Source: Macrostomum lignano (lineage: Eukaryota). From it: a DNA stretch of 61,539 nt. The translations under genes and the position numbers were made by a program. The notes below the pieces were generated by a model that was not told the DNA's origin, did not search any database, and was given only the letters and a program-made list of their open reading frames with translations. The stretch is taken from positions 1-61,539 of the forward strand of contig NIVC01000770.1 in NCBI GenBank assembly GCA_002269645.1, read 5' to 3'. Positions 1 to 60,461 of the stretch are shown here, in pieces; position 1 is the first letter of the stretch; each line of letters begins with the position of its first letter.

Positions 1-3000
1 CGAAGGCTTCGTGCTCCTGCAACAAGCCTCGCTCATCAGGCACTGGCAGGTCGGCTTCTTCTGCGGATGGCTTCTTCTTCGCCTCTTCCTCAACGGCCTC
101 GAGAAGTGCTTCTTCTCCTCTCGCCGCCAGAGCTCTTCCTCCCTAGCCATGCTGGTGGTACACGCTCCTCCTCGAAGTGCCGCCTCCTCCTCCCAGCTGA
201 CGCACTCTTCCGCGTACACGTACATCTTGTCGAAGGCTTCGTGCTCCTGCAACAAGCCTCGCTCATCAGGCACTGGCAGGTCGGCTTCTTCTGCGGATGG
301 CTTCTTCTTCGCCTCTTCCTCAACGGCCTCGAAGAAGTGCTTCTTCTCCTCTCGCCGCCAGAGCTCTTCCTCCCTAGCCATGCTGGTGGTACACGCTCCT
401 CCTCGAAGTGGGCCGCCTCCTCCTCCCAGCTGACGCACTCTTCCGCGTACACGTACATCTTGTCGAAGGCTTCGTGCTCCTGCAACAAGCCTCGCTCATC
501 AGGCACTGGCAGGTCGGCTTCTTCTGCGGATGGCTTCTTCTTCGCCTCTTCCTCAACGGCCTCGAAGAAGTGCTTCTTCTCCTCTCGCCGCCAGAGCTCT
601 TCCTCCCTAGCCAGCTGGTGGTACACGCTCCTCCTCGAAGTGGGCCGCCTCCTCCTCCCAGCTGACGCACTCTTCCGCGTACACGTACATCTTGTCGAAG
701 GCTTCGTGCTCCTGCAACAAGCCTCGCTCATCAGGCACTGGCAGGTCGGCTTCTTCTGCGGATGGCTTCTTCTTCGCCTCTTCCTCAACGGCCTCGAAGA
801 AGTGCTTCTTCTCCTCTCGCCGCCAGAGCTCTTCCTCCCTAGCCAGTGCTGGTGGTACACGCTCCTCCTCGAAGTGGGCCGCCTCCTCCTCCCAGCTGAC
901 GCACTCTTCCGCGTACACGTACATCTTGTCGAAGGCTTCGTGCTCCTGCAACAAGCCTCGCTCATCAGGCACTGGCAGGTCGGCTTCTTCTGCGGATGGC
1001 TTCTTCTTCGCCTCTTCCTCAACGGCCTCGAAGAAGTGCTTCTTCTCCTCTCGCCGCCAGAGCTCTTCCTCCCTAGCCAGTGCTGGTGGTACACGCTCCT
1101 CCTCGAAGTGGGCCGCCTCCTCCTCCCAGCTGACGCACTCTTCCGCGTACACGTACATCTTGTCGAAGGCTTCGTGCTCCTGCAACAAGCCTCGCTCATC
1201 AGGCACTGGCAGGTCGGCTTCTTCTGCGGATGGCTTCTTCTTCGCCTCTTCCTCAACGGCCTCGAAGAAGTGCTTCTTCTCCTCTCGCCGCCAGAGCTCT
1301 TCCTCCCTAGCCAGTGCTGGTGGTACACGCTCCTCCTCGAAGTGGGCCGCCTCCTCCTCCCAGCTGACGCACTCTTCCGCGTACACGTACATCTTGTCGA
1401 AGGCTTCGTGCTCCTGCAACAAGCCTCGCTCATCAGGCACTGGCAGGTCGGCTTCTTCTGCGGATGGCTTCTTCTTCGCCTCTTCCTCAACGGCCTCGAA
1501 GAAGTGCTTCTTCTCCTCTCGCCGCCAGAGCTCTTCCTCCCTAGCCAGTGCTGGTGGTACACGCTCCTCCTCGAAGTGGGCCGCCTCCTCCTCCCAGCTG
1601 ACGCACTCTTCCGCGTACACGTACATCTTGTCGAAGGCTTCGTGCTCCTGCAACAAGCCTCGCTCATCAGGCACTGGCAGGTCGGCTTCTTCTGCGGATG
1701 GCTTCTTCTTCGCCTCTTCCTCAACGGCCTCGAAGAAGTGCTTCTTCTCCTCTCGCCGCCAGAGCTCTTCCTCCCTAGCCAGTGCTGGTGGTACACGCTC
1801 CTCCTCGAAGTGGGCCGCCTCCTCCTCCCAGCTGACGCACTCTTCCGCGTACACGTACATCTTGTCGAAGGCTTCGTGCTCCTGCAACAAGCCTCGCTCA
1901 TCAGGCACTGGCAGGTCGGCTTCTTCTGCGGATGGCTTCTTCTTCGCCTCTTCCTCAACGGCCTCGAAGAAGTGCTTCTTCTCCTCTCGCCGCCAGAGCT
2001 CTTCCTCCCTAGCCAGTGCTGGTGGTACACGCTCCTCCTCGAAGTGGGCCGCCTCCTCCTCCCAGCTGACGCACTCTTCCGCGTACACGTACATCTTGTC
2101 GAAGGCTTCGTGCTCCTGCAACAAGCCTCGCTCATCAGGCACTGGCAGGTCGGCTTCTTCTGCGGATGGCTTCTTCTTCGCCTCTTCCTCAACGGCCTCG
2201 AAGAAGTGCTTCTTCTCCTCTCGCCGCCAGAGCTCTTCCTCCCTAGCCAGTGCTGGTGGTACACGCTCCTCCTCGAAGTGGGCCGCCTCCTCCTCCCAGC
2301 TGACGCACTCTTCCGCGTACACGTACATCTTGTCGAAGGCTTCGTGCTCCTGCAACAAGCCTCGCTCATCAGGCACTGGCAGGTCGGCTTCTTCTGCGGA
2401 TGGCTTCTTCTTCGCCTCTTCCTCAACGGCCTCGAAGAAGTGCTTCTTCTCCTCTCGCCGCCAGAGCTCTTCCTCCCTAGCCAGTGCTGGTGGTACACGC
2501 TCCTCCTCGAAGTGGGCCGCCTCCTCCCAGCTGACGCACTCTTCCGCGTACACGTACATCTTGTCGAAGGCTTCGTGCTCCTGCAACAAGCCTCGCTCAT
2601 CAGGCACTGGCAGGTCGGCTTCTTCTGCGGATGGCTTCTTCTTCGCCTCTTCCTCAACGGCCTCGAAGAAGTGCTTCTTCTCCTCTCGCCGCCAGAGCTC
2701 TTCCTCCCTAGCCAGTGCTGGTGGTACACGCTCCTCCTCGAAGTGGGCCGCCTCCTCCTCCCAGCTGACGCACTCTTCCGCGTACACGTACATCTTGTCG
2801 AAGGCTTCGTGCTCCTGCAACAAGCCTCGCTCATCAGGCACTGGCAGGTCGGCTTCTTCTGCGGATGGCTTCTTCTTCGCCTCTTCCTCAACGGCCTCGA
2901 AGAAGTGCTTCTTCTCCTCTCGCCGCCAGAGCTCTTCCTCCCTAGCCAGTGCTGGTGGTACACGCTCCTCCTCGAAGTGGGCCGCCTCCTCCTCCCAGCT

Positions 3001-6000
3001 GACGCACTCTTCCGCGTACACGTACATCTTGTCGAAGGCTTCGTGCTCCTGCAACAAGCCTCGCTCATCAGGCACTGGCAGGTCGGCTTCTTCTGCGGAT
3101 GGCTTCTTCTTCGCCTCTTCCTCAACGGCCTCGAAGAAGTGCTTCTTCTCCTCTCGCCGCCAGAGCTCTTCCTCCCTAGCCAGTGCTGGTGGTACACGCT
3201 CCTCCTCGAAGTGGGCCGCCTCCTCCTCCCAGCTGACGCACTCTTCCGCGTACACGTACATCTTGTCGAAGGCTTCGTGCTCCTGCAACAAGCCTCGCTC
3301 ATCAGGCACTGGCAGGTCGGCTTCTTCTGCGGATGGCTTCTTCTTCGCCTCTTCCTCAACGGCCTCGAAGAAGTGCTTCTTCTCCTCTCGCCGCCAGAGC
3401 TCTTCCTCCCTAGCCAGTGCTGGTGGTACACGCTCCTCCTCGAAGTGGGCCGCCTCCTCCTCCCAGCTGACGCACTCTTCCGCGTACACGTACATCTTGT
3501 CGAAGGCTTCGTGCTCCTGCAACAAGCCTCGCTCATCAGGCACTGGCAGGTCGGCTTCTTCTGCGGATGGCTTCTTCTTCGCCTCTTCCTCAACGGCCTC
3601 GAAGAAGTGCTTCTTCTCCTCTCGCCGCCAGAGCTCTTCCTCCCTAGCCAGTGCTGGTGGTACACGCTCCTCCTCGAAGTGGGCCGCCTCCTCCTCCCAG
3701 CTGACGCACTCTTCCGCGTACACGTACATCTTGTCGAAGGCTTCGTGCTCCTGCAACAAGCCTCGCTCATCAGGCACTGGCAGGTCGGCTTCTTCTGCGG
3801 ATGGCTTCTTCTTCGCCTCTTCCTCAACGGCCTCGAAGAAGTGCTTCTTCTCCTCTCGCCGCCAGAGCTCTTCCTCCCTAGCCAGTGCTGGTGGTACACG
3901 CTCCTCCTCGAAGTGGGCCGCCTCCTCCTCCCAGCTGACGCACTCTTCCGCGTACACGTACATCTTGTCGAAGGCTTCGTGCTCCTGCAACAAGCCTCGC
4001 TCATCAGGCACTGGCAGGTCGGCTTCTTCTGCGGATGGCTTCTTCTTCGCCTCTTCCTCAACGGCCTCGAAGAAGTGCTTCTTCTCCTCTCGCCGCCAGA
4101 GCTCTTCCTCCCTAGCCAGTGCTGGTGGTACACGCTCCTCCTCGAAGTGGGCCGCCTCCTCCTCCCAGCTGACGCACTCTTCCGCGTACACGTACATCTT
4201 GTCGAAGGCTTCGTGCTCCTGCAACAAGCCTCGCTCATCAGGCACTGGCAGGTCGGCTTCTTCTGCGGATGGCTTCTTCTTCGCCTCTTCCTCAACGGCC
4301 TCGAAGAAGTGCTTCTTCTCCTCTCGCCGCCAGAGCTCTTCCTCCCTAGCCAGTGCTGGTGGTACACGCTCCTCCTCGAAGTGGGCCGCCTCCTCCTCCC
4401 AGCTGACGCACTCTTCCGCGTACACGTACATCTTGTCGAAGGCTTCGTGCTCCTGCAACAAGCCTCGCTCATCAGGCACTGGCAGGTCGGCTTCTTCTGC
4501 GGATGGCTTCTTCTTCGCCTCTTCCTCAACGGCCTCGAAGAAGTGCTTCTTCTCCTCTCGCCGCCAGAGCTCTTCCTCCCTAGCCAGTGCTGGTGGTACA
4601 CGCTCTCCTCGAAGTGGGCCGCCTCCTCCTCCCAGCTGACGCACTCTTCCGCGTACACGTACATCTTGTCGAAGGCTTCGTGCTCCTGCAACAAGCCTCG
4701 CTCATCAGGCACTGGCAGGTCGGCTTCTTCTGCGGATGGCTTCTTCTTCGCCTCTTCCTCAACGGCCTCGAAGAAGTGCTTCTTCTCCTCTCGCCGCCAG
4801 AGCTCTTCCTCCCTAGCCAGTGCTGGTGGTACACGCTCCTCCTCGAAGTGGGCCGCCTCCTCCTCCCAGCTGACGCACTCTTCCGCGTACACGTACATCT
4901 TGTCGAAGGCTTCGTGCTCCTGCAACAAGCCTCGCTCATCAGGCACTGGCAGGTCGGCTTCTTCTGCGGATGGCTTCTTCTTCGCCTCTTCCTCAACGGC
5001 CTCGAAGAAGTGCTTCTTCTCCTCTCGCCGCCAGAGCTCTTCCTCCCTAGCCAGTGCTGGTGGTACACGCTCCTCCTCGAAGTGGGCCGCCTCCTCCTCC
5101 CAGCTGACGCACTCTTCCGCGTACACGTACATCTTGTCGAAGGCTTCGTGCTCCTGCAACAAGCCTCGCTCATCAGGCACTGGCAGGTCGGCTTCTTCTG
5201 CGGATGGCTTCTTCTTCGCCTCTTCCTCAACGGCCTCGAAGAAGTGCTTCTTCTCCTCTCGCCGCCAGAGCTCTTCCTCCCTAGCCAGTGCTGGTGGTAC
5301 ACGCTCCTCCTCGAAGTGGGCCGCCTCCTCCTCCCAGCTGACGCACTCTTCCGCGTACACGTACATCTTGTCGAAGGCTTCGTGCTCCTGCAACAAGCCT
5401 CGCTCATCAGGCACTGGCAGGTCGGCTTCTTCTGCGGATGGCTTCTTCTTCGCCTCTTCCTCAACGGCCTCGAAGAAGTGCTTCTTCTCCTCTCGCCGCC
5501 AGAGCTCTTCCTCCCTAGCCAGTGCTGGTGGTACACGCTCCTCCTCGAAGTGGGCCGCCTCCTCCTCCCAGCTGACGCACTCTTCCGCGTACACGTACAT
5601 CTTGTCGAAGGCTTCGTGCTCCTGCAACAAGCCTCGCTCATCAGGCACTGGCAGGTCGGCTTCTTCTGCGGATGGCTTCTTCTTCGCCTCTTCCTCAACG
5701 GCCTCGAAGAAGTGCTTCTTCTCCTCTCGCCGCCAGAGCTCTTCCTCCCTAGCCAGTGCTGGTGGTACACGCTCCTCCTCGAAGTGGGCCGCCTCCTCCT
5801 CCCAGCTGACGCACTCTTCCGCGTACACGTACATCTTGTCGAAGGCTTCGTGCTCCTGCAACAAGCCTCGCTCATCAGGCACTGGCAGGTCGGCTTCTTC
5901 TGCGGATGGCTTCTTCTTCGCCTCTTCCTCAACGGCCTCGAAGAAGTGCTTCTTCTCCTCTCGCCGCCAGAGCTCTTCCTCCCTAGCCAGTGCTGGTGGT

Positions 6001-9000
6001 ACACGCTCCTCCTCGAAGTGGGCCGCCTCCTCCTCCCAGCTGACGCACTCTTCCGCGTACACGTACATCTTGTCGAAGGCTTCGTGCTCCTGCAACAAGC
6101 CTCGCTCATCAGGCACTGGCAGGTCGGCTTCTTCTGCGGATGGCTTCTTCTTCGCCTCTTCCTCAACGGCCTCGAAGAAGTGCTTCTTCTCCTCTCGCCG
6201 CCAGAGCTCTTCCTCCCTAGCCAGTGCTGGTGGTACACGCTCCTCCTCGAAGTGGGCCGCCTCCTCCTCCCAGCTGACGCACTCTTCCGCGTACACGTAC
6301 ATCTTGTCGAAGGCTTCGTGCTCCTGCAACAAGCCTCGCTCATCAGGCACTGGCAGGTCGGCTTCTTCTGCGGATGGCTTCTTCTTCGCCTCTTCCTCAA
6401 CGGCCTCGAAGAAGTGCTTCTTCTCCTCTCGCCGCCAGAGCTCTTCCTCCCTAGCCAGTGCTGGTGGTACACGCTCCTCCTCGAAGTGGGCCGCCTCCTC
6501 CTCCCAGCTGACGCACTCTTCCGCGTACACGTACATCTTGTCGAAGGCTTCGTGCTCCTGCAACAAGCCTCGCTCATCAGGCACTGGCAGGTCGGCTTCT
6601 TCTGCGGATGGCTTCTTCTTCGCCTCTTCCTCAACGGCCTCGAAGAAGTGCTTCTTCTCCTCTCGCCGCCAGAGCTCTTCCTCCCTAGCCAGTGCTGGTG
6701 GTACACGCTCCTCCTCGAAGTGGGCCGCCTCCTCCTCCCAGCTGACGCACTCTTCCGCGTACACGTACATCTTGTCGAAGGCTTCGTGCTCCTGCAACAA
6801 GCCTCGCTCATCAGGCACTGGCAGGTCGGCTTCTTCTGCGGATGGCTTCTTCTTCGCCTCTTCCTCAACGGCCTCGAAGAAGTGCTTCTTCTCCTCTCGC
6901 CGCCAGAGCTCTTCCTCCCTAGCCAGTGCTGGTGGTACACGCTCCTCCTCGAAGTGGGCCGCCTCCTCCTCCCAGCTGACGCACTCTTCCGCGTACACGT
7001 ACATCTTGTCGAAGGCTTCGTGCTCCTGCAACAAGCCTCGCTCATCAGGCACTGGCAGGTCGGCTTCTTCTGCGGATGGCTTCTTCTTCGCCTCTTCCTC
7101 AACGGCCTCGAAGAAGTGCTTCTTCTCCTCTCGCCGCCAGAGCTCTTCCTCCCTAGCCAGTGCTGGTGGTACACGCTCCTCCTCGAAGTGGGCCGCCTCC
7201 TCCTCCCAGCTGACGCACTCTTCCGCGTACACGTACATCTTGTCGAAGGCTTCGTGCTCCTGCAACAAGCCTCGCTCATCAGGCACTGGCAGGTCGGCTT
7301 CTTCTGCGGATGGCTTCTTCTTCGCCTCTTCCTCAACGGCCTCGAAGAAGTGCTTCTTCTCCTCTCGCCGCCAGAGCTCTTCCTCCCTAGCCAGTGCTGG
7401 TGGTACACGCTCCTCCTCGAAGTGGGCCGCCTCCTCCTCCCAGCTGACGCACTCTTCCGCGTACACGTACATCTTGTCGAAGGCTTCGTGCTCCTGCAAC
7501 AAGCCTCGCTCATCAGGCACTGGCAGGTCGGCTTCTTCTGCGGATGGCTTCTTCTTCGCCTCTTCCTCAACGGCCTCGAAGAAGTGCTTCTTCTCCTCTC
7601 GCCGCCAGAGCTCTTCCTCCCTAGCCAGTGCTGGTGGTACACGCTCCTCCTCGAAGTGGGCCGCCTCCTCCTCCCAGCTGACGCACTCTTCCGCGTACAC
7701 GTACATCTTGTCGAAGGCTTCGTGCTCCTGCAACAAGCCTCGCTCATCAGGCACTGGCAGGTCGGCTTCTTCTGCGGATGGCTTCTTCTTCGCCTCTTCC
7801 TCAACGGCCTCGAAGAAGTGCTTCTTCTCCTCTCGCCGCCAGAGCTCTTCCTCCCTAGCCAGTGCTGGTGGTACACGCTCCTCCTCGAAGTGGGCCGCCT
7901 CCTCCTCCCAGCTGACGCACTCTTCCGCGTACACGTACATCTTGTCGAAGGCTTCGTGCTCCTGCAACAAGCCTCGCTCATCAGGCACTGGCAGGTCGGC
8001 TTCTTCTGCGGATGGCTTCTTCTTCGCCTCTTCCTCAACGGCCTCGAAGAAGTGCTTCTTCTCCTCTCGCCGCCAGAGCTCTTCCTCCCTAGCCAGTGCT
8101 GGTGGTACACGCTCCTCCTCGAAGTGGGCCGCCTCCTCCTCCCAGCTGACGCACTCTTCCGCGTACACGTACATCTTGTCGAAGGCTTCGTGCTCCTGCA
8201 ACAAGCCTCGCTCATCAGGCACTGGCAGGTCGGCTTCTTCTGCGGATGGCTTCTTCTTCGCCTCTTCCTCAACGGCCTCGAAGAAGTGCTTCTTCTCCTC
8301 TCGCCGCCAGAGCTCTTCCTCCCTAGCCAGTGCTGGTGGTACACGCTCCTCCTCGAAGTGGGCCGCCTCCTCCTCCCAGCTGACGCACTCTTCCGCGTAC
8401 ACGTACATCTTGTCGAAGGCTTCGTGCTCCTGCAACAAGCCTCGCTCATCAGGCACTGGCAGGTCGGCTTCTTCTGCGGATGGCTTCTTCTTCGCCTCTT
8501 CCTCAACGGCCTCGAAGAAGTGCTTCTTCTCCTCTCGCCGCCAGAGCTCTTCCTCCCTAGCCAGTGCTGGTGGTACACGCTCCTCCTCGAAGTGGGCCGC
8601 CTCCTCCTCCCAGCTGACGCACTCTTCCGCGTACACGTACATCTTGTCGAAGGCTTCGTGCTCCTGCAACAAGCCTCGCTCATCAGGCACTGGCAGGTCG
8701 GCTTCTTCTGCGGATGGCTTCTTCTTCGCCTCTTCCTCAACGGCCTCGAAGAAGTGCTTCTTCTCCTCTCGCCGCCAGAGCTCTTCCTCCCTAGCCAGTG
8801 CTGGTGGTACACGCTCCTCCTCGAAGTGGGCCGCCTCCTCCTCCCAGCTGACGCACTCTTCCGCGTACACGTACATCTTGTCGAAGGCTTCGTGCTCCTG
8901 CAACAAGCCTCGCTCATCAGGCACTGGCAGGTCGGCTTCTTCTGCGGATGGCTTCTTCTTCGCCTCTTCCTCAACGGCCTCGAAGAAGTGCTTCTTCTCC

Positions 9001-39000: not shown

Positions 39001-42000
39001 TCCTCCTCGAAGTGGGCCGCCTCCTCCTCCCAGCTGACGCACTCTTCCGCGTACACGTACATCTTGTCGAAGGCTTCGTGCTCCTGCAACAAGCCTCGCT
39101 CATCAGGCACTGGCAGGTCGGCTTCTTCTGCGGATGGCTTCTTCTTCGCCTCTTCCTCAACGGCCTCGAAGAAGTGCTTCTTCTCCTCTCGCCGCCAGAG
39201 CTCTTCCTCCCTAGCCAGTGCTGGTGGTACACGCTCCTCCTCGAAGTGGGCCGCCTCCTCCTCCCAGCTGACGCACTCTTCCGCGTACACGTACATCTTG
39301 TCGAAGGCTTCGTGCTCCTGCAACAAGCCTCGCTCATCAGGCACTGGCAGGTCGGCTTCTTCTGCGGATGGCTTCTTCTTCGCCTCTTCCTCAACGGCCT
39401 CGAAGAAGTGCTTCTTCTCCTCTCGCCGCCAGAGCTCTTCCTCCCTAGCCAGTGCTGGTGGTACACGCTCCTCCTCGAAGTGGGCCGCCTCCTCCTCCCA
39501 GCTGACGCACTCTTCCGCGTACACGTACATCTTGTCGAAGGCTTCGTGCTCCTGCAACAAGCCTCGCTCATCAGGCACTGGCAGGTCGGCTTCTTCTGCG
39601 GATGGCTTCTTCTTCGCCTCTTCCTCAACGGCCTCGAAGAAGTGCTTCTTCTCCTCTCGCCGCCAGAGCTCTTCCTCCCTAGCCAGTGCTGGTGGTACAC
39701 GCTCCTCCTCGAAGTGGGCCGCCTCCTCCTCCCAGCTGACGCACTCTTCCGCGTACACGTACATCTTGTCGAAGGCTTCGTGCTCCTGCAACAAGCCTCG
39801 CTCATCAGGCACTGGCAGGTCGGCTTCTTCTGCGGATGGCTTCTTCTTCGCCTCTTCCTCAACGGCCTCGAAGAAGTGCTTCTTCTCCTCTCGCCGCCAG
39901 AGCTCTTCCTCCCTAGCCAGTGCTGGTGGTACACGCTCCTCCTCGAAGTGGGCCGCCTCCTCCTCCCAGCTGACGCACTCTTCCGCGTACACGTACATCT
40001 TGTCGAAGGCTTCGTGCTCCTGCAACAAGCCTCGCTCATCAGGCACTGGCAGGTCGGCTTCTTCTGCGGATGGCTTCTTCTTCGCCTCTTCCTCAACGGC
40101 CTCGAAGAAGTGCTTCTTCTCCTCTCGCCGCCAGAGCTCTTCCTCCCTAGCCAGTGCTGGTGGTACACGCTCCTCCTCGAAGTGGGCCGCCTCCTCCTCC
40201 CAGCTGACGCACTCTTCCGCGTACACGTACATCTTGTCGAAGGCTTCGTGCTCCTGCAACAAGCCTCGCTCATCAGGCACTGGCAGGTCGGCTTCTTCTG
40301 CGGATGGCTTCTTCTTCGCCTCTTCCTCAACGGCCTCGAAGAAGTGCTTCTTCTCCTCTCGCCGCCAGAGCTCTTCCTCCCTAGCCAGTGCTGGTGGTAC
40401 ACGCTCCTCCTCGAAGTGGGCCGCCTCCTCCTCCCAGCTGACGCACTCTTCCGCGTACACGTACATCTTGTCGAAGGCTTCGTGCTCCTGCAACAAGCCT
40501 CGCTCATCAGGCACTGGCAGGTCGGCTTCTTCTGCGGATGGCTTCTTCTTCGCCTCTTCCTCAACGGCCTCGAAGAAGTGCTTCTTCTCCTCTCGCCGCC
40601 AGAGCTCTTCCTCCCTAGCCAGTGCTGGTGGTACACGCTCCTCCTCGAAGTGGGCCGCCTCCTCCTCCCAGCTGACGCACTCTTCCGCGTACACGTACAT
40701 CTTGTCGAAGGCTTCGTGCTCCTGCAACAAGCCTCGCTCATCAGGCACTGGCAGGTCGGCTTCTTCTGCGGATGGCTTCTTCTTCGCCTCTTCCTCAACG
40801 GCCTCGAAGAAGTGCTTCTTCTCCTCTCGCCGCCAGAGCTCTTCCTCCCTAGCCAGTGCTGGTGGTACACGCTCCTCCTCGAAGTGGGCCGCCTCCTCCT
40901 CCCAGCTGACGCACTCTTCCGCGTACACGTACATCTTGTCGAAGGCTTCGTGCTCCTGCAACAAGCCTCGCTCATCAGGCACTGGCAGGTCGGCTTCTTC
41001 TGCGGATGGCTTCTTCTTCGCCTCTTCCTCAACGGCCTCGAAGAAGTGCTTCTTCTCCTCTCGCCGCCAGAGCTCTTCCTCCCTAGCCAGTGCTGGTGGT
41101 ACACGCTCCTCCTCGAAGTGGGCCGCCTCCTCCTCCCAGCTGACGCACTCTTCCGCGTACACGTACATCTTGTCGAAGGCTTCGTGCTCCTGCAACAAGC
41201 CTCGCTCATCAGGCACTGGCAGGTCGGCTTCTTCTGCGGATGGCTTCTTCTTCGCCTCTTCCTCAACGGCCTCGAAGAAGTGCTTCTTCTCCTCTCGCCG
41301 CCAGAGCTCTTCCTCCCTAGCCAGTGCTGGTGGTACACGCTCCTCCTCGAAGTGGGCCGCCTCCTCCTCCCAGCTGACGCACTCTTCCGCGTACACGTAC
41401 ATCTTGTCGAAGGCTTCGTGCTCCTGCAACAAGCCTCGCTCATCAGGCACTGGCAGGTCGGCTTCTTCTGCGGATGGCTTCTTCTTCGCCTCTTCCTCAA
41501 CGGCCTCGAAGAAGTGCTTCTTCTCCTCTCGCCGCCAGAGCTCTTCCTCCCTAGCCAGTGCTGGTGGTACACGCTCCTCCTCGAAGTGGGCCGCCTCCTC
41601 CTCCCAGCTGACGCACTCTTCCGCGTACACGTACATCTTGTCGAAGGCTTCGTGCTCCTGCAACAAGCCTCGCTCATCAGGCACTGGCAGGTCGGCTTCT
41701 TCTGCGGATGGCTTCTTCTTCGCCTCTTCCTCAACGGCCTCGAAGAAGTGCTTCTTCTCCTCTCGCCGCCAGAGCTCTTCCTCCCTAGCCAGTGCTGGTG
41801 GTACACGCTCCTCCTCGAAGTGGGCCGCCTCCTCCTCCCAGCTGACGCACTCTTCCGCGTACACGTACATCTTGTCGAAGGCTTCGTGCTCCTGCAACAA
41901 GCCTCGCTCATCAGGCACTGGCAGGTCGGCTTCTTCTGCGGATGGCTTCTTCTTCGCCTCTTCCTCAACGGCCTCGAAGAAGTGCTTCTTCTCCTCTCGC

Positions 42001-45000
42001 CGCCAGAGCTCTTCCTCCCTAGCCAGTGCTGGTGGTACACGCTCCTCCTCGAAGTGGGCCGCCTCCTCCTCCCAGCTGACGCACTCTTCCGCGTACACGT
42101 ACATCTTGTCGAAGGCTTCGTGCTCCTGCAACAAGCCTCGCTCATCAGGCACTGGCAGGTCGGCTTCTTCTGCGGATGGCTTCTTCTTCGCCTCTTCCTC
42201 AACGGCCTCGAAGAAGTGCTTCTTCTCCTCTCGCCGCCAGAGCTCTTCCTCCCTAGCCAGTGCTGGTGGTACACGCTCCTCCTCGAAGTGGGCCGCCTCC
42301 TCCTCCCAGCTGACGCACTCTTCCGCGTACACGTACATCTTGTCGAAGGCTTCGTGCTCCTGCAACAAGCCTCGCTCATCAGGCACTGGCAGGTCGGCTT
42401 CTTCTGCGGATGGCTTCTTCTTCGCCTCTTCCTCAACGGCCTCGAAGAAGTGCTTCTTCTCCTCTCGCCGCCAGAGCTCTTCCTCCCTAGCCAGTGCTGG
42501 TGGTACACGCTCCTCCTCGAAGTGGGCCGCCTCCTCCTCCCAGCTGACGCACTCTTCCGCGTACACGTACATCTTGTCGAAGGCTTCGTGCTCCTGCAAC
42601 AAGCCTCGCTCATCAGGCACTGGCAGGTCGGCTTCTTCTGCGGATGGCTTCTTCTTCGCCTCTTCCTCAACGGCCTCGAAGAAGTGCTTCTTCTCCTCTC
42701 GCCGCCAGAGCTCTTCCTCCCTAGCCAGTGCTGGTGGTACACGCTCCTCCTCGAAGTGGGCCGCCTCCTCCTCCCAGCTGACGCACTCTTCCGCGTACAC
42801 GTACATCTTGTCGAAGGCTTCGTGCTCCTGCAACAAGCCTCGCTCATCAGGCACTGGCAGGTCGGCTTCTTCTGCGGATGGCTTCTTCTTCGCCTCTTCC
42901 TCAACGGCCTCGAAGAAGTGCTTCTTCTCCTCTCGCCGCCAGAGCTCTTCCTCCCTAGCCAGTGCTGGTGGTACACGCTCCTCCTCGAAGTGGGCCGCCT
43001 CCTCCTCCCAGCTGACGCACTCTTCCGCGTACACGTACATCTTGTCGAAGGCTTCGTGCTCCTGCAACAAGCCTCGCTCATCAGGCACTGGCAGGTCGGC
43101 TTCTTCTGCGGATGGCTTCTTCTTCGCCTCTTCCTCAACGGCCTCGAAGAAGTGCTTCTTCTCCTCTCGCCGCCAGAGCTCTTCCTCCCTAGCCAGTGCT
43201 GGTGGTACACGCTCCTCCTCGAAGTGGGCCGCCTCCTCCTCCCAGCTGACGCACTCTTCCGCGTACACGTACATCTTGTCGAAGGCTTCGTGCTCCTGCA
43301 ACAAGCCTCGCTCATCAGGCACTGGCAGGTCGGCTTCTTCTGCGGATGGCTTCTTCTTCGCCTCTTCCTCAACGGCCTCGAAGAAGTGCTTCTTCTCCTC
43401 TCGCCGCCAGAGCTCTTCCTCCCTAGCCAGTGCTGGTGGTACACGCTCCTCCTCGAAGTGGGCCGCCTCCTCCTCCCAGCTGACGCACTCTTCCGCGTAC
43501 ACGTACATCTTGTCGAAGGCTTCGTGCTCCTGCAACAAGCCTCGCTCATCAGGCACTGGCAGGTCGGCTTCTTCTGCGGATGGCTTCTTCTTCGCCTCTT
43601 CCTCAACGGCCTCGAAGAAGTGCTTCTTCTCCTCTCGCCGCCAGAGCTCTTCCTCCCTAGCCAGTGCTGGTGGTACACGCTCCTCCTCGAAGTGGGCCGC
43701 CTCCTCCTCCCAGCTGACGCACTCTTCCGCGTACACGTACATCTTGTCGAAGGCTTCGTGCTCCTGCAACAAGCCTCGCTCATCAGGCACTGGCAGGTCG
43801 GCTTCTTCTGCGGATGGCTTCTTCTTCGCCTCTTCCTCAACGGCCTCGAAGAAGTGCTTCTTCTCCTCTCGCCGCCAGAGCTCTTCCTCCCTAGCCAGTG
43901 CTGGTGGTACACGCTCCTCCTCGAAGTGGGCCGCCTCCTCCTCCCAGCTGACGCACTCTTCCGCGTACACGTACATCTTGTCGAAGGCTTCGTGCTCCTG
44001 CAACAAGCCTCGCTCATCAGGCACTGGCAGGTCGGCTTCTTCTGCGGATGGCTTCTTCTTCGCCTCTTCCTCAACGGCCTCGAAGAAGTGCTTCTTCTCC
44101 TCTCGCCGCCAGAGCTCTTCCTCCCTAGCCAGTGCTGGTGGTACACGCTCCTCCTCGAAGTGGGCCGCCTCCTCCTCCCAGCTGACGCACTCTTCCGCGT
44201 ACACGTACATCTTGTCGAAGGCTTCGTGCTCCTGCAACAAGCCTCGCTCATCAGGCACTGGCAGGTCGGCTTCTTCTGCGGATGGCTTCTTCTTCGCCTC
44301 TTCCTCAACGGCCTCGAAGAAGTGCTTCTTCTCCTCTCGCCGCCAGAGCTCTTCCTCCCTAGCCAGTGCTGGTGGTACACGCTCCTCCTCGAAGTGGGCC
44401 GCCTCCTCCTCCCAGCTGACGCACTCTTCCGCGTACACGTACATCTTGTCGAAGGCTTCGTGCTCCTGCAACAAGCCTCGCTCATCAGGCACTGGCAGGT
44501 CGGCTTCTTCTGCGGATGGCTTCTTCTTCGCCTCTTCCTCAACGGCCTCGAAGAAGTGCTTCTTCTCCTCTCGCCGCCAGAGCTCTTCCTCCCTAGCCAG
44601 TGCTGGTGGTACACGCTCCTCCTCGAAGTGGGCCGCCTCCTCCTCCCAGCTGACGCACTCTTCCGCGTACACGTACATCTTGTCGAAGGCTTCGTGCTCC
44701 TGCAACAAGCCTCGCTCATCAGGCACTGGCAGGTCGGCTTCTTCTGCGGATGGCTTCTTCTTCGCCTCTTCCTCAACGGCCTCGAAGAAGTGCTTCTTCT
44801 CCTCTCGCCGCCAGAGCTCTTCCTCCCTAGCCAGTGCTGGTGGTACACGCTCCTCCTCGAAGTGGGCCGCCTCCTCCTCCCAGCTGACGCACTCTTCCGC
44901 GTACACGTACATCTTGTCGAAGGCTTCGTGCTCCTGCAACAAGCCTCGCTCATCAGGCACTGGCAGGTCGGCTTCTTCTGCGGATGGCTTCTTCTTCGCC

Positions 45001-45206
45001 TCTTCCTCAACGGCCTCGAAGAAGTGCTTCTTCTCCTCTCGCCGCCAGAGCTCTTCCTCCCTAGCCAGTGCTGGTGGTACACGCTCCTCCTCGAAGTGGG
45101 CCGCCTCCTCCTCCCAGCTGACGCACTCTTCCGCGTACACGTACATCTTGTCGAAGGCTTCGTGCTCCTGCAACAAGCCTCGCTCATCAGGCACTGGCAG
45201 GTTGGC
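1..45206 (-). repeat. Coding tandem array, 234-bp unit, ~193 copies, open-ended at window start
   Basis: The 60-nt lines recur every 2,340 bp (e.g. lines 4621, 6961, 9301), i.e. 10 x 234 bp, and the translated unit is 78 aa. Identity to the unit ends at 45,202-45,206 (ggcaggttggc vs consensus ggcaggtcggc). Hand count of unit GC is 141/234 (60%). Confidence 0.99.
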
Positions 45207-46922
45207 CTTTTTTGCTTGTTTTCTAATTGCCTTAAAAATTTGCTTCTTTTGTAAGGGTTCGGCGATTGAGAGCGTGACTTCGTATTCAGTAACAAGGATG
45301 TGTTGAAGTTCTTGTAGTTCTGAATCGACGATGGAGCCCGTCATGATAATTTTTTTTTCTCCTTTTTTTGCTTGCTGAGTTTTTAATGGGACTAAGCTTT
45401 GTTCGAGTAGAATGTAATTTTCATCTACGTGTTCACTTATTAGATTCGAATAGAGTTCTGGAATGGATTGGATAATGTTTATTTGTTGTTCCACTTGATG
45501 GCTCAGAATAACGTTCGGTGTTATTTTTCTGAGTTCGTCTGGTTGTAACATCGTCGTAGCAGCATCGGTGAACTCAGCGCTTCCACAGTCCGGGCTTGAA
45601 ACTTTGCTGCCTTTTGTAGTTTGTAGTTCGTCGACTTTTTTAACCGATTCGTTTCTTGTCTCAGTTGTGGAAAATTCTTCAAATAATGACACAGTTGCTT
45701 CATATTCAGTAATTGTTGTTTGCTGAACGATAAGCTGTTCAGGCTTAGTAAGCAATGCCATCATAGGAACTGGTTCATGGACATCTGTAGCTTCCACCAT
45801 CTCTTCTTGGAAATCACTGTTGAAAGTGTGTAGGTGCTGCTGAGCTTGAAGGTAATGGTCATTTACTTGTTCTTGAATTAGTGTCCAAGAATCTGCTCGA
45901 ACAGATTCACGATTATTTTTTGGATGTTGAACCTGATGGTTGACAACAAGAGTACTGCTTAGTGCTGTCTGTTCCTCATCTTTTAACACAGAGATCCACT
46001 CAACCTCAAGAGTCTCCCACTCAGTGGCACATGAAGAGCCGCTTGCACTTTTATTCTGAGACAATATCACTCTATTTACCAGTTCATTGTTGCCAGACGC
46101 CTCAGTACCCCAGTGGCCTAACCAATATTTAGGTTCCTTTGTTTTTTGAGCTTCTTTTTCTACTGGCTTCGAATGAGCTTCCGATTGGGCGCTTGTCGCG
46201 ATGTTTTTGCTCATTGCACTTTCGTTGCTGGGGCGAAGTCGAACTGAGCATAGCGGGCTAATCTGGTTTTCTAGTGAGCAGCGCAGACGAAAGAAGAGAG
46301 ACTGGCTTCCTGTGGCAATGCTTGGTTGATTTTGTCTGGACTCGACTGTCTGTCTGAGTGGCATTTGTTCCAAAGCTTGCGGATGCTGCCTTGCACCAAA
46401 TGACCGCTGACTATCGACATCGTGCTCTGTAGAAACTGGAGCAGCCTGATTCTTACTGACACTCCTGTGATGGGTTGGAGCCGATTCAGACCGTGTTTCG
46501 GTCGCAATCGCAAACTGCGAATGATGTAGTTGTGGTGCTCGTTCTGATCGATAATTGCTAATGATGATTGGCAAAGGGATAGGCGGCGGTTGAGTATTTG
46601 GCAGAGCGAGTCTCACTTTCAGCTTTTTTGTACTTCTATCCGCGGCGAATTCCTGGTTGATTGAAGTATTGCGCGACGCTGAATCACTGCGCGTAGAATC
46701 AATTGTGCAGAGCAATCGAAGCTCGGCCGTGCAGGTTTGATTAGACTCCTGTATTCGAACTTTGATTGGGTTCCTATGGTAATCGAAATCAGTAGTGGAA
46801 TTTTTGTCGCCAGTAGAAGTACTTACAGCATTGAAATCACAACTAAACTCGTCTTCGACTCGAGAATCGGTCTCAGCGAAGCTCGGATGAATTCGATTTT
46901 GCTTACTTTTTCTTCGTTTCAT
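1..46922 (-). CDS. Giant Glu-rich repeat protein (unique N-terminal ~570 aa + >=190 x 78-aa repeats); titin/PEVK-like by composition only; 3' end not in window
   Basis: ATG at 46,922-46,920 opens a stop-free frame through ~1.7 kb of AT-rich unique sequence that continues in frame into the repeat. The Glu-rich frame holds to ~4,605 (~14,100 aa), where a 1-bp deletion shifts it. The same peptide continues in another frame (ORF 607..4644). The literal ORF ends at 90 only through further deletions. The true start may lie further upstream. Confidence 0.8.
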
Positions 46923-57190: not shown

Positions 57191-57895
57191 ACCCGCTGCC
57201 ACACTGAATCCGCCCCTTCTTACCCGCTGCCACACTGAATCCGCCCCTTCTTACCCGCTGCCACACTGAATCCGCCCCTTCTTACCCGCTGCCACACTGA
57301 ATCCGCCCCTTCTTACCCGCTGCCACACTGAATCCGCCCCTTCTTACCCGCTGCCACACTGAATCCGCCCCTTCTTACCCGCTGCCACACTGAATCCGCC
57401 CCTTCTTACCCGCTGCCACACTGAATCCGCCCCTTCTTACCCGCTGCCACACTGAATCCGCCCCCTCTTACCCGCTGCCACACTGAATCCGCCCCCTCTT
57501 ATTCGCTGCCACACTGAATCCGCCCCCTCTTACCCGCTGCCACACTGAATCCGCCCCTTCTTACCCGCTGCCACACTGAATCCGCCCCTTCTTACCCGCT
57601 GCCACACTGAATCCGCCCCCTCTTACCCGCTGCCACACTGAATCCGCCCCTTCTTACCCGCTGCCACACTGAATCCGCCCCCTCTTACCCGCTGCCACAC
57701 TGAATCCGCCCTTCTTACCCGCTGCCACACTGAATCCGCCCCTTCTTACCCGCTGCCACACTGAATCCGCCCCTTCTTACCCGCTGCCACACTGAATCCG
57801 CCCCCTCTTACCCGCTGCCACACTGAATCCGCCCCTTCTTACCCGCTGCCACACTGAATCCGCCCCCTCTTACCCGCTGCCACACTGAATCCGCC
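57191..57895. repeat. Minisatellite, 31-bp unit (acccgctgccacactgaatccgccccttctt), ~23 copies, downstream of TM9SF2
   Basis: Period 31 (57,191, 57,222, ...), with two interspersed variants ccccttctta and ccccctctta. Confidence 0.98.
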
Positions 57896-59146: not shown

Positions 59147-60162
59147 TGTGGCGCCTCTTGATGCTGGCGCCACTTGGTGCTGGCGCCTCGGTGCTGGCGC
59201 CTCGGTGCTGGCGGCTCGGTGCTGGTGCCTCGGTGCTGGTGCCTCGGTGCTGGTGCCTCGGTGCTGGTGCCTCGGTGCTGGCGCCACGGTGCTGGCGCCA
59301 CGGTGCTGGTGCTCGGTGCTGGCGCCACGGTGCTGGCGCTACGGTGCTGGCGCCACGTGGTGCTGGCGCCACGGTGCTGGCACCACGGTGCTGGCGCCAC
59401 GATGCTGGCGCCTTGGTGCTGGCGCCTCGGTGCTGGCGCCACTTGGTGCTGGCGCCACTTGGTGCTTGCGCCACTTGGTGCTGGCGCCTCGGTGCTGGCG
59501 CCTTGGTGCTGGCGCCACGGTGCTGGCACCACGGTGCTGGCACCACGGTGCTGGCACCACGGTGCTGGCGCCTTGGTGCTGGCGCCTTGGTGCTGGCGCC
59601 TCGGTGCTGGCGCCTTGGTGCTGGCGCCACTTGGTGCTTGCGCCACTTGGTGCTGGCGCCACGGTGCTGACGCCACGGTGCTGGCGCTACGGTGCTGGCG
59701 CCACGGTGCTGGCACCACGGTGCTGGCGCCATGGTGCTGGCGCAACTTGGTTCTGGCGCCACGGTGCTGGCGCCTTGGTGCTGGCGCCTCGGTGCTGGCG
59801 CAACTTGGTTCTGGCGCCACGGTGCTGGCGCCTTGGTGCTGGCGCCTCGGTGCTGGAGCCTTGGTGCTGGCGCCACTTGGTGCTTGCGCCACTTGGTGCT
59901 GACGCCACGGTGCTGGCGCCACGGTGCTGGCGCCACGGTGCTGGCGCCACGGTGCTGGCGCTACGGTGCTGGCACCACGGTGCTGGCGCCATGGTGCTGG
60001 CGCCACGGTGCTGGCGCCACGGTGCTGGCGCCACGGTGCTGGCGCCACGGTGCTGGCGCTACGGTGCTGGCGCTACGGTGCTGGCACCACGGTGCTGGCG
60101 CCATGGTGCTGGCGCAACTTGGTGCTGGCGCCACGGTGCTGGCGCTACGGTGCTGGCGCCAC
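59147..60162. repeat. GC-rich satellite, 14-bp core unit (ggtgctggcgccac) with 14/16-bp variants, roughly 70 copies
   Basis: Directly visible; accounts for all overlapping APAP/WRH-type ORFs at 59.1-60.2 kb. Confidence 0.97.
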
Positions 60163-60461
60163 TTGACGCGTTACCGTCGAGCTTACAGTAGGTCGATTCA
60201 TTCGGCTAATGTTTCAGGTTGCATTTTTGCTTTCTTCCTTTCCTACTAGTTTATCGGGTTTAAGTAGTATGGTTAGTGTAGGTGAGTTAGTACAGAAGCA
60301 GTTGCGTCGGGATAAGCGAAATGAAACTTTTGAAACTTAGCATTCAAGATTTGAACATGTAAAAAGGCGCTTCAGTAGTCATTCGTATTGGAACGATCAG
60401 CCGCAGTTGATCGACTTGACGTCCTGCATAAGACCTGATTAGTCGAGAGCAACACGCGCGC

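What the first reader, a model, noticed from the sequence alone, without database searches (positions are those of the whole stretch)
1..46922. Giant repeat protein: >=15,600 codons, ~193 x 78-aa units, apparently in one >=46-kb exon
Seen: a stop-free frame runs from unique sequence into ~193 copies of an in-frame 234-bp unit, with no intervening non-repeat DNA and no end within the window. Per unit (hand count): 22 Glu + 3 Asp vs 6 Lys + 5 Arg (net about -14), P+E+V+K = 38/78, helix-prone EEEA/RREEKK segments separated by Pro clusters (PVP, VPP, KP). The N-terminus (MKRRKSK) has no signal peptide. Known: giant single-exon repeat cores exist (AHNAK, mucins, titin PEVK), but the long vertebrate coding exons I know of are around 20 kb. 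Inference: an intracellular megadalton (~1.8 MDa estimated) polyanionic spacer, spring or scaffold; I do not recognise the repeat unit as a named family.
Basis: partly seen in the sequence, partly recalled or inferred. Interest (0 to 1): 0.9.

Follow-up and report, generated by a model that had tools for sequence, protein, structure and literature searches.

The report
Flatworm acidic repeat gene, unmeasured length
The window is a whole contig of the public Macrostomum lignano (flatworm) genome in which a real, transcribed, species-restricted gene runs into an array of identical 78-amino-acid acidic repeats, but the "193 copies / 46-kb exon" is not a measurement, because the contig simply ends inside the array.

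Summary
The array is real: 193.2 copies of a 234-bp unit at window 1-45206. 188 units are 100% identical and there is not one substitution. The acidic frame holds for 574 unique codons plus 173 units. A 1-bp deletion at unit 174 then shifts reading into a second open frame, and the literal ORF stops at 90-92. Four of six frames of the unit are open, so stop-freeness across the array is weak evidence.

The window is contig NIVC01000770.1 (61,539 bp) of Macrostomum lignano Mlig_3_7, a PacBio CLR/Canu/Pilon assembly. The array runs to the contig end. Two sister scaffolds carry the same locus and break into N-gaps after 19.6 and 15.8 units. Copy number is therefore unknown.

Coding status is well supported:
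- continuity with a 574-codon ORF (0 stops, against 24-42 in the other frames);
- codon-position GC like the neighbouring TM9SF gene;
- a degenerate in-frame partial unit at the border;
- deposited gene models inside the array, taken to be transcript-based;
- a second, 99-aa array downstream that is open in one frame only.

No homologue was found outside M. lignano and no known domain. Verdict: a new, lineage-restricted acidic helical repeat protein of unknown size. Record size is possible but unproven.

The parts
45201..46922 (-). Unique N-terminal coding region, 574 codons (MKRRKSK...KQAKKAN). GC 43%, GC3 0.38. Predicted largely disordered or unpredictable.
   Evidence: ORF. It has 0 stops in frame against 24-42 in the other five frames. 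The deposited models P0123 (517 aa) and P0121 (331 aa) are identical to it. AF2 pLDDT is 37. An in-frame TGA lies 7 codons upstream of the ATG and a tttcag acceptor-like site about 30 nt upstream.
45201..45251 (-). Degenerate partial repeat unit at the array border. QKKQIFKAIRKQAKKAN corresponds to the unit end EKKHFFEAVEEEAKK[KPSAEE]AD, in register with the first full unit, with an in-frame 18-nt difference and A/T-rich codons.
   Evidence: BLASTP gives 47% identity over 15 aa, E = 0.023 in the small search space. The codon-by-codon comparison was read.
4719..45200 (-). 173 consecutive, 100% identical 234-bp units (78 aa each) in the acidic frame: LPVPDERGLLQEHEAFDKMYVYAEECVSWEEEAAHFEEERVPPALAREEELWRREEKKHFFEAVEEEAKKKPSAEEAD.
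   Evidence: GC1/2/3 = 0.73/0.33/0.74. AF2 gives helix-VPP-helix-linker per unit.
1..4718 (-). Last 20.2 units, up to the contig end. Units 174, 183, 191, 192 and 193 carry deletions of 1, 3, 2, 1 and 4 bp. The frame is lost at unit 174 and the literal stop is at 90-92. Read as residual long-read consensus error at a contig end.
   Evidence: Contig identity.
45340..45385 (-). ATTAAA followed by the A-rich stretch GCAAAAAAAGGAGAAAAAAAAATT inside the ORF. The deposited 517-aa and 331-aa partial gene models end exactly here (at ...KTQQ) without a stop. This is probably an internal-priming or false poly(A) cut made by the annotation pipeline.
   Evidence: Pipeline description in PMC5730564. The cause is inferred.
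51424..56659 (+). Divergently oriented neighbour: a TM9SF2-like (EMP70) gene. Exon segments lie at about 51466-51792, 53973-55043, 55463-55738 and 56594-56659, with introns largely made of minisatellites. It was used as the codon-usage reference and to place the organism in Metazoa.
   Evidence: Pfam EMP70, E = 1.9e-22, 7e-144 and 9.1e-28. 76-81% identity to animal TM9SF2. ORFs, repeats.

Best explanation
The window holds the 5' part of a real, transcribed, lineage-restricted protein-coding gene of the flatworm Macrostomum lignano (related deposited locus tag BOX15_Mlig003749g7).

Shown:
- Translation starts at the ATG at window 46922 (minus strand), crosses 574 unique codons and enters, without a stop, a tandem array of a 234-bp / 78-aa unit.
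- In sister scaffold NIVC01000167.1 a gap follows the array, then a second array of 99-aa R/E/D-rich units on the same strand.

Inferred:
- The units are kept identical by very recent unequal crossing-over and gene conversion (concerted evolution). Consensus and short-read polishing may have exaggerated the identity.
- The GC-rich codons of the array (GC3 0.74, against 0.38 in the unique part) fit GC-biased conversion or selection on codon usage.
- The product is an intracellular string of acidic modules (pI 4.5, net -14 per unit). Each module has two helices of about 35 and 28 residues split by VPP and is joined to the next by a 13-residue Pro-containing linker. It would act as a long, charged, extensible structural or spacer protein.

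Not established: the number of units. The contig ends inside the array, so 193 is what the assembler laid out, not a count.
For: Identity:
- The window equals the whole of NIVC01000770.1, 61,539 bp, GCA_002269645.1.
- PAA53305.1 is named as a Macrostomum lignano protein. NIVC00000000 is Mlig_3_7.

Coding:
- The unique ORF has 0 stops against 24-42 in the other frames.
- The array joins it in frame.
- Unit GC1/2/3 = 0.73/0.33/0.74, matching the neighbour TM9SF exons (GC3 0.73-0.83). The alternative open frame would put the GC-rich position second.
- A degenerate partial unit sits at the border, in register and with an in-frame 18-nt indel.
- The only substitution seen among copies (A42G in units 1-2 of both sister scaffolds) is synonymous in the acidic frame and K>R in the other.
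- The downstream 297-bp array is open in only 1 of 6 frames, on the same strand.

Transcription:
- The annotation deposited for this assembly is described as built only from stranded RNA-seq and transcript assemblies.
- Gene tables for the three loci list sense-strand models over the unique region (517 and 331 aa), inside the 234-bp array (380, 292 and 687 aa) and over the 297-bp array (1457 aa). One of them carries the GenBank accession PAA53305.1. The unique-region models lack a stop codon, as partial transcript-derived models do. That all the models come from the deposit is inferred, not shown.

Structure: AF2 gives helix(35)-VPP-helix(28)-linker per unit, with helix pLDDT 75-84.

Precedent in the same species: Mlig-ap2, 14,794 aa, with 21 x 255-aa and 25 x 221-aa repeats (PMC6410801).
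Against: - There is no protein-level evidence.
- No homologue outside M. lignano in a 5.8-billion-protein word-index search or an exhaustive HMMER search of 1.84 billion cluster representatives. Cross-species conservation therefore cannot be tested.
- With 188 identical units there is no within-array substitution pattern to test selection. The 297-bp array shows 5 synonymous to 10 nonsynonymous changes, which is not distinguishable from neutral.
- The unit is open in 4 of 6 frames.
- The deposited model on this contig stops at 517 aa and nothing is annotated over the array.
- The helices are not significantly amphipathic and pTM is 0.18, so no defined fold is supported.
- The function is pure inference.
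Confidence: 0.75

Rival explanations
1. The gene is real, but the size is an assembly artefact. The true array is much shorter (tens of units). The 45 kb arose because Canu chained PacBio reads from several near-identical haplotype copies through ambiguous overlaps in a perfect tandem repeat. The perfect identity is partly produced by consensus and Pilon polishing with multi-mapping reads.
For: - The array runs to the contig end, and errors pile up in the last 4.7 kb.
- The assembly is PacBio CLR + Canu 1.4 + Pilon + SSPACE, from a line with extra chromosome copies and 180-312 Mb of assembled redundancy.
- Three contigs carry the same locus with no substitutions over 3.2 kb of flank and unique CDS, yet they show 193, 19.6 and 15.8 units.
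- On NIVC01000167.1 the scaffolder put only 2,221 N between 19.6 units and the next array, which implies about 29 units.
- The A42G variant in units 1-2 of both sister scaffolds is missing from the window.
Against: - The other sister scaffold has a gap of at least 9,994 N after its 15.8 units, which suggests a long array there.
- Neither sister contig crosses the array, which would be expected if it were only about 7 kb and 130x PacBio data were available (inference).
- Collapse is at least as common as expansion in such assemblies (general knowledge).
Confidence: 0.45
2. The array is an expanded, essentially non-coding satellite or VNTR that grew out of a coding repeat. The present locus would be a non-functional or decaying allele. 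Transcripts may exist, but no giant protein is made.
For: - Perfect homogeneity over 40 kb, and a GC content (60%) and codon usage sharply different from the attached unique region.
- Four of six frames are open, so the ORF is uninformative.
- Tandem and simple repeats make up 15% of this genome.
- One sister copy has a 1-bp deletion at +282 that breaks the unique ORF.
- No orthologue is known.
Against: - The codon-position GC pattern is that of the acidic frame and matches a housekeeping neighbour.
- The amino-acid sequence is complex (W, Y, F, H, C and M are present).
- The border unit has diverged in frame.
- The same transcription unit continues into a second array that is open in only one frame.
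- Gene models taken to be transcript-based lie in the array on the sense strand.
- The +282 deletion is of the same kind as the assembly's indel errors.
Confidence: 0.12
3. The array is coding but is not one exon. Parts of it are removed by splicing between identical units, or the mRNA is cut, so the mature protein carries far fewer units than the genome.
For: - The deposited models are fragmented: 517 aa ending at an ATTAAA/A-rich site, with separate 380-, 292- and 687-aa models inside the array.
- M. lignano processes many precursor transcripts by trans-splicing.
Against: - The unit has no AATAAA or ATTAAA, and by eye none of its ten GT sites has a good donor context.
- The fragmentation is explained by the pipeline, which cuts at poly(A)-like signals and drops transcripts that overlap repeat annotation.
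- Ending at 45372 would give a non-stop mRNA.
Confidence: 0.1

Closest known systems
Mlig-ap2 / Mlig-ap1, the giant adhesive proteins of the same species (Wunderer et al. 2019, PMC6410801)
   Same: - Macrostomum lignano proteins with no homologues in nr.
- Very large (14,794 and 5,407 aa).
- Built around long tandem arrays of long units (21 x 255 aa plus 25 x 221 aa), with two different arrays in series.
   Different: - Those proteins are secreted and carry vWD, TIL, LDL-receptor, TSP1, EGF and C-type lectin domains; Mlig-ap1 is extremely basic.
- This protein has no Pfam domain and no signal peptide, and it is acidic (pI 4.5).
- They have expression, RNAi and mass-spectrometry evidence. This one has none.
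Spider aggregate spidroin AgSp1 and other spidroins (PMC6553539)
   Same: Very long coding sequence made of homogenised repeats in very large exons: a 42,270-bp CDS in two exons of about 21 kb each. These genes likewise needed spanning long reads to size.
   Different: - No spidroin N- or C-terminal domains.
- Completely different composition (E-rich and helical rather than G/P/T/Q-rich).
- The spidroins were sized with spanning nanopore reads and RNA. This array was not.
Titin PEVK / polyE segment
   Same: Rich in P, E, V and K (38/78), strongly acidic stretches and Pro clusters. The idea of an entropic spring is conceivable.
   Different: - PEVK units are about 28 residues, largely unstructured, spread over many small exons, and set in a protein full of Ig and FN3 domains.
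- Here the unit is 78 aa and predicted mostly helical. No Ig or FN3 domain was found.
AHNAK and mucin-type single-exon repeat cores (from general knowledge)
   Same: A long central repeat region apparently uninterrupted by introns, flanked by a unique N-terminus.
   Different: - AHNAK has 128-aa units and an N-terminal PDZ domain.
- Mucins are secreted and rich in S, T and P.
- Neither feature is present here.
Homogenised satellite or minisatellite DNA
   Same: A head-to-tail array with near-zero divergence between units, a degenerate unit at the edge, and copy number that differs between assembled copies.
   Different: The unit is a multiple of 3, continuous with a long ORF, shows a coding-type GC pattern by codon position, and lies within gene models taken to be transcript-based.

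Membership tests
Giant tandem-repeat protein encoded in one very long exon (AHNAK / mucin / spidroin class) | Reading frame uninterrupted from unique sequence through all repeats | tested here: inconclusive
   The acidic frame is intact for 574 + 173 x 78 codons. It is then lost to a 1-bp deletion at unit 174, and more deletions follow up to a stop at 90-92. These look like contig-end errors, but that cannot be proved here.
Giant tandem-repeat protein encoded in one very long exon (AHNAK / mucin / spidroin class) | Repeat number established by molecules that span the array | tested here: not met
   The contig ends in the array. The sister scaffolds have N-gaps after 19.6 and 15.8 units.
Giant tandem-repeat protein encoded in one very long exon (AHNAK / mucin / spidroin class) | Sense-strand mRNA colinear with the array (no introns) | not testable with these tools
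   Only indirect evidence: sense-strand gene models, taken to be transcript-based, lie inside the array on NIVC01000167.1. No reads were available.
Giant tandem-repeat protein encoded in one very long exon (AHNAK / mucin / spidroin class) | Protein product detected | not testable with these tools
   No proteomic data could be reached. The gene ID was not found in the held papers or supplements.
Titin PEVK segment | About 28-residue PPAK or polyE motifs within a titin-like protein carrying Ig/FN3 domains | tested here: not met
   The period is 78 aa. No Pfam domain at E <= 1 other than a sub-threshold DUF1153 hit. The unit is predicted helical.
AHNAK | 128-aa repeat units and an N-terminal PDZ domain | tested here: not met
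   78-aa unit; no PDZ hit.
Macrostomum adhesive proteins Mlig-ap1/ap2 | Secretory protein with vWD/TIL/EGF/TSP1/lectin domains and the published repeat units | tested here: not met
   No such Pfam domains. No N-terminal hydrophobic segment. Acidic rather than basic. Domain list from PMC6410801.
Non-coding satellite DNA | Tandem array without coding signal (no long ORF continuity, no codon-position bias) | tested here: not met
   The array is in frame with a 574-codon ORF. GC1/2/3 = 0.73/0.33/0.74, like the neighbouring gene. Gene models lie in the array.
Single alpha-helix (ER/K) domain proteins | Long runs of alternating E and K/R blocks with few hydrophobic residues, giving an isolated stable helix | tested here: inconclusive
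   Segments such as REEELWRREEKK fit. However, aromatic and hydrophobic residues are frequent and Pro breaks each unit into helices of 35 and 28 residues. There is no significant amphipathic moment.

The most novel reading that the evidence does not exclude
Macrostomum lignano really carries, and translates, an uninterrupted coding exon of more than 46 kb. It would be made of about 200 or more perfectly identical 78-aa acidic helical modules, followed by a second array of 99-aa modules, giving a protein above 1.6-2 MDa. That would be about twice the longest coding exons I could document (about 21 kb in AgSp1) and among the largest polypeptides known in animals. It would also be an extreme case of concerted evolution inside a coding sequence.
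Probability: 0.2. Interest if true: 0.7.

Novelty: new member of a known kind. Interest (0 to 1): 0.4.

Why it matters
If the array length is real, this would be a record-size coding exon and one of the largest animal proteins. It sits in a transgenic, RNAi-amenable model flatworm, so knock-down and tagging are feasible. It would also be a clean system for studying how a coding repeat is kept perfectly homogeneous.

If the length is not real, the case is a useful warning. A stop-free frame across a perfect tandem array at a contig end says nothing about protein size, and public annotation pipelines silently drop such genes because they overlap repeat masks. Either way, an uncharacterised, transcribed, species-restricted acidic repeat gene with at least two serial arrays has been delimited and can now be tested.

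Tried and rejected
- **Homology.** Pfam on the unique region plus 2 units gave nothing above threshold. The word-index search of 5.8 billion proteins found nothing; it also missed the self-hits that later found, so it counts for little on its own. The exhaustive HMMER search of 1.84 billion representatives returned only two M. lignano self-hits. A search with 99-aa + 78-aa units returned only a frameshifted M. lignano UniProt model, A0A1I8F6H6. The metagenome scan found nothing. PDB sequence searches found nothing. Foldseek against PDB found nothing significant.
- **Cluster member P0124 and metagenome contig L006.** These looked like a possible orthologue but share no similarity with the window. 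This is a clustering artefact.
- **Expression data.** Searches for Mlig003749 in the held literature and in the supplements of three papers found nothing. Wasik et al. 2015 (for PacBio read lengths) is not held.
- **Selection tests.** Impossible within the 234-bp array, which has no substitutions. Uninformative in the 297-bp array (5 synonymous, 10 nonsynonymous).
- **Helical-hairpin packing.** The hydrophobic moment of both helices is no different from shuffles, and AF2 pTM is 0.18. I do not claim a packed fold.
- **AF2 of the unique region.** pLDDT 37, uninformative.
- **Rfam and tRNA scans of the flank.** Nothing except a spurious tRNA-Ala inside a 14-bp repeat.
- **The R/S-rich second open frame as the true frame.** Rejected. 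It is not continuous with the start codon and would put the GC-rich position at codon position 2.


Full report
**1. What is in the sequence**

Tandem Repeats Finder reports one array at window 1-45206: period 234 bp, 193.2 copies, 99% matches, 0% indels. I cut the minus strand at a fixed anchor and obtained 193 units. Of these, 188 are 100% identical to each other.

The other five differ only by deletions: unit 174 (starting at window 4718) lacks 1 bp, unit 183 lacks 3, unit 191 lacks 2, unit 192 lacks 1, and unit 193 lacks 4. There is no substitution anywhere in 45 kb.

The unit translates to LPVPDERGLLQEHEAFDKMYVYAEECVSWEEEAAHFEEERVPPALAREEELWRREEKKHFFEAVEEEAKKKPSAEEAD. It has 22 E, 3 D, 6 K and 5 R, a net charge of -14 and pI 4.5. 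P+E+V+K is 38 of 78 and the unit weighs 9.3 kDa.

Upstream on the minus strand lies a 574-codon unique region, starting at the ATG at 46922. It joins the array in frame with no intervening DNA.

**2. What the open frame is worth**

The mechanical ORF at 90..46922(-) has 15,610 codons, but the acidic frame persists only through 173 exact units. The 1-bp deletion in unit 174 moves reading into a second minus-strand frame (R/S-rich) that also has no stops. Further deletions move it again until a stop at 90-92.

The consensus unit is open in 4 of 6 frames. In shuffles of the unit a given frame is open about 12% of the time, and at least one frame in 54%. Because one unit is copied 188 times, freedom from stops over 45 kb carries no more information than freedom from stops over 234 bp.

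The deletion-only variants, all within 4.7 kb of position 1, look like residual long-read consensus errors at a contig end.

**3. Where the window comes from**

The exhaustive HMMER search of 1.84 billion cluster representatives returned two hits. One is a 331-aa protein 100% identical to residues 187-517 of the unique region. The other is a 77-aa protein 91% identical to the unit.

The second hit is GenBank PAA53305.1, 'hypothetical protein BOX15_Mlig003749g7, partial [Macrostomum lignano]'. Their encoding contigs belong to GCA_002269645.1. A third model of 517 aa lies on NIVC01000770.1, whose length is 61,539 bp, the same as the window. The fetched stretch of that record equals window 35372-56922 base for base.

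The window is therefore the entire contig NIVC01000770.1 of the Mlig_3_7 assembly of the flatworm Macrostomum lignano, line DV1 (NIVC00000000, Wudarski et al. 2017, PMC5730564).

That assembly was made from PacBio CLR reads with Canu 1.4. It was polished with Pilon using Illumina and RNA-seq reads and scaffolded with SSPACE. The sequenced line carries extra large chromosomes, and the assembly contains 180-312 Mb of near-identical duplicated sequence. Tandem and simple repeats make up 15% of the genome.

**4. Consequence for the size claim**

The array runs to the end of a contig. 'No end within the window' therefore means only that the assembler stopped.

In a perfect tandem repeat, read overlaps are ambiguous in register. 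The laid-out length (193 units) is then neither a lower nor an upper bound. This is an inference from how overlap assemblers work.

Two further scaffolds of the same assembly carry the same locus:
- NIVC01000167.1 (L002) has 19.6 units followed by 2,221 N.
- NIVC01003104.1 (L003/L004) has 15.8 units, increasingly error-ridden, followed by at least 9,994 N.

Across 1.5 kb of upstream sequence and the 1.7-kb unique CDS, the three copies show no substitutions. L002 carries a 5-bp insertion at position -136, a 1-bp deletion at position +282 and a 5-bp end gap at the edge of the aligned segment. L003 is identical to the window over this stretch. Over longer flanks identity is 99.5-99.9%. They are haplotype or duplicate copies of one locus.

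None of the three crosses the array. The scaffolder's gap estimates (about 2.2 kb and at least 10 kb) disagree with each other and with 45 kb.

In both sister scaffolds, units 1 and 2 carry A42G, and every other clean unit equals the window consensus. The window's own units 1 and 2 lack A42G. This is either a real allelic difference or homogenisation by polishing.

The near-perfect identity of units is thus reproduced on separately assembled contigs of the same assembly. The copy number is not.

**5. Is it coding?**

Several independent lines say yes, in the acidic frame.

(a) The unique region has 0 stops in frame against 24-42 in the other five frames, at 43% GC.

(b) The unit has GC1/GC2/GC3 = 0.73/0.33/0.74. 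The exons of the neighbouring TM9SF gene have GC3 of 0.73-0.83 and low GC2, and the same codon preferences (GAG>GAA, AAG>AAA, TTC>TTT). The alternative open frame would place the GC-rich position second.

(c) The last 17 residues of the 'unique' region (QKKQIFKAIRKQAKKAN) are a diverged copy of the unit's end (EKKHFFEAVEEEAKK...AD). This copy sits exactly in register with the first full unit, differs by an in-frame 18-nt indel and is written in A/T-rich codons. The array has a decayed, frame-preserving edge.

(d) The single substitution seen between copies, A42G, is GAA>GAG. It is synonymous in the acidic frame and K>R in the other. This is one data point only.

(e) On L002, beyond the gap, a second array begins on the same strand. 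It has a 297-bp period (99 aa: REREREAARQEELVSHRRRERRRRDERARRDIARAERRFEDDQFKVDEIVQADEEVLVDEDVRHQIDLFDDKVLEDREASEIEEDLPPMRKEDELKAPE) and more than 10 copies. It is open in only one of six frames.

(f) The gene models deposited with this assembly are described as derived solely from stranded RNA-seq (StringTie) and de novo transcripts, with TransDecoder ORFs. The gene tables returned for these loci list sense-strand models over the unique region (517 and 331 aa), inside the 234-bp array (380, 292 and 687 aa; the 687-aa one is in the acidic frame) and over the 297-bp array (1,457 aa). One of these carries a GenBank protein accession (PAA53305.1), and the unique-region models have no stop codon. 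I take this to mean the models come from the deposited annotation, but that is an inference.

The 517- and 331-aa models end without a stop at ...KTQQ. This is exactly at an ATTAAA followed by GCAAAAAAAGGAGAAAAAAAAATT. It looks like an internal-priming poly(A) signal at which the pipeline cut the transcript. The pipeline also discards transcripts that overlap repeat annotation. That would explain why nothing is annotated over the array on this contig. This point is inferred.

**6. What cannot be shown here**

- There is no substitution variation in the 234-bp array on which to test selection.
- The 297-bp array gives 5 synonymous to 10 nonsynonymous changes, which is uninformative.
- No relative exists outside M. 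lignano in the word-index search of 5.8 billion proteins, the exhaustive search of 1.84 billion representatives, or the metagenome scan.
- A seeming metagenomic relative was a clustering artefact.
- No expression or proteomic record for Mlig003749 was found in the held literature.
- I could not walk further along the sister scaffolds to the C-terminus.

**7. What the protein would be like**

AlphaFold2, run on a single sequence of four units, predicts the same pattern in each unit: a helix of about 35 residues, a break at VPP, a helix of about 28 residues, then a 13-residue linker (KPSAEEADLPVPD). Helix pLDDT is 75-84 but pTM is 0.18, so there is local helicity and no defined global fold.

The helices are not significantly amphipathic. 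Foldseek and PDB sequence searches find nothing. The unique region is predicted at pLDDT 37.

There is no hydrophobic N-terminal segment. The start MKRRKSK is a basic cluster that could act as a nuclear localisation signal (inference).

The most likely working model is an intracellular, very long, highly acidic chain of short helical modules joined by proline hinges, that is, a charged spacer, tether or scaffold.

**8. Comparison with known things**

- **Same species.** Mlig-ap2 (14,794 aa; 21 x 255-aa followed by 25 x 221-aa repeats) and Mlig-ap1 (5,407 aa) have no homologues in nr (PMC6410801). Giant, orphan, serial-array proteins are therefore an established feature of M. lignano. Those are secreted, domain-bearing adhesives, and Mlig-ap1 is extremely basic. 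This protein is none of these.
- **Exon size.** The best documented case I could retrieve is spider AgSp1, with a 42,270-bp CDS in two exons of about 21 kb, sized with spanning nanopore reads (PMC6553539). A true exon above 46 kb would be about twice that.
- **Titin PEVK, AHNAK and mucins.** Each fails on its defining features (unit length, associated domains, secretion); see the membership table.
- **Plain satellite DNA.** This reading fails on the coding signals listed in section 5.

**9. Verdict**

The array, the unit and the junction are as described. The 'stop-free 15,600-codon frame' is broken in the acidic frame at unit 174 and is statistically uninformative.

The gene is real, transcribed, lineage-restricted and encodes an acidic helical repeat protein. 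Its size and its single-exon status are not established, because the window is a contig that ends inside the array and the two sister scaffolds have gaps there.

My estimates are:
- about 0.75 that this is a genuine coding repeat of a functional gene;
- about 0.2 that the locus really encodes 15,000 or more codons in one exon.

Novelty: a new member of a known kind (giant orphan tandem-repeat proteins, already known in this species). Interest 0.4, rising to about 0.7 if spanning reads and peptides confirm the size.

Noticed in passing
window 51424-56659 (+): A TM9SF2-like (EMP70) gene lies head-to-head with the repeat gene. Two of its introns are made up largely of minisatellites: 30 bp x 9.8 at 55068-55355 and 29 bp x 19.8 at 55819-56422. 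The exon reading frames stay open well into these arrays. A 660-aa EMP70 model is listed on both sister scaffolds, but none is listed on this contig within the range seen.
   Followed up: partly
window 52817-52965 vs L002 2860-3519: A 73-bp minisatellite in a TM9SF intron has 2.0 copies in the window and 9.0 copies in the sister scaffold NIVC01000167.1. This is a length difference between otherwise 99.5-99.9% identical copies of the locus.
   Followed up: no
window 57191-57895, 59162-60162, 60458-60920: Three more homogeneous minisatellite arrays lie downstream of TM9SF: 31 bp x 22.8 at 97% identity, 14 bp x 70, and 32 bp x 12.8-14.5. The 14-bp array is open in several frames on both strands and yields many spurious ORFs of 170-347 aa.
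   Followed up: no
window 59680-59774 (+): ARAGORN calls a tRNA-Ala(GGC) of 95 nt inside the 14-bp repeat array. Rfam finds nothing there. It is almost certainly a false positive.
   Followed up: partly
L002 17975-20993 (NIVC01000167.1): A second tandem array lies downstream of the gap: 297 bp / 99 aa, R/E/D-rich, more than 10 copies at 97% identity. It is on the same strand and open in one frame only. Copies differ by in-frame 3- and 6-bp deletions and by 1-bp homopolymer indels. A frameshifted UniProt model from the older ML2 assembly (A0A1I8F6H6) covers the same repeat.
   Followed up: partly
window 45201-46922 vs 1-45200: Composition changes abruptly inside one ORF. GC goes from 43% to 60% and GC3 from 0.38 to 0.74 at the array border. 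The unique part is far from the codon usage of the neighbouring housekeeping gene, whereas the array matches it. GC-biased gene conversion in the recombining array is one possible cause. This was not tested.
   Followed up: no
L002 about 9725 (position +282 of the ORF; window 46641): The NIVC01000167.1 copy has a 1-bp deletion that breaks the unique ORF after residue ~94. This explains why its deposited model starts at Met187 (331 aa). It could be an assembly error or a truly disrupted copy.
   Followed up: partly
The word-index protein search returned no hit for a query that has 100%-identical 331-aa and 517-aa entries in the collection. The exhaustive search found them. A negative result from the word-index tool on E-rich repetitive queries should not be trusted alone.
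   Followed up: no
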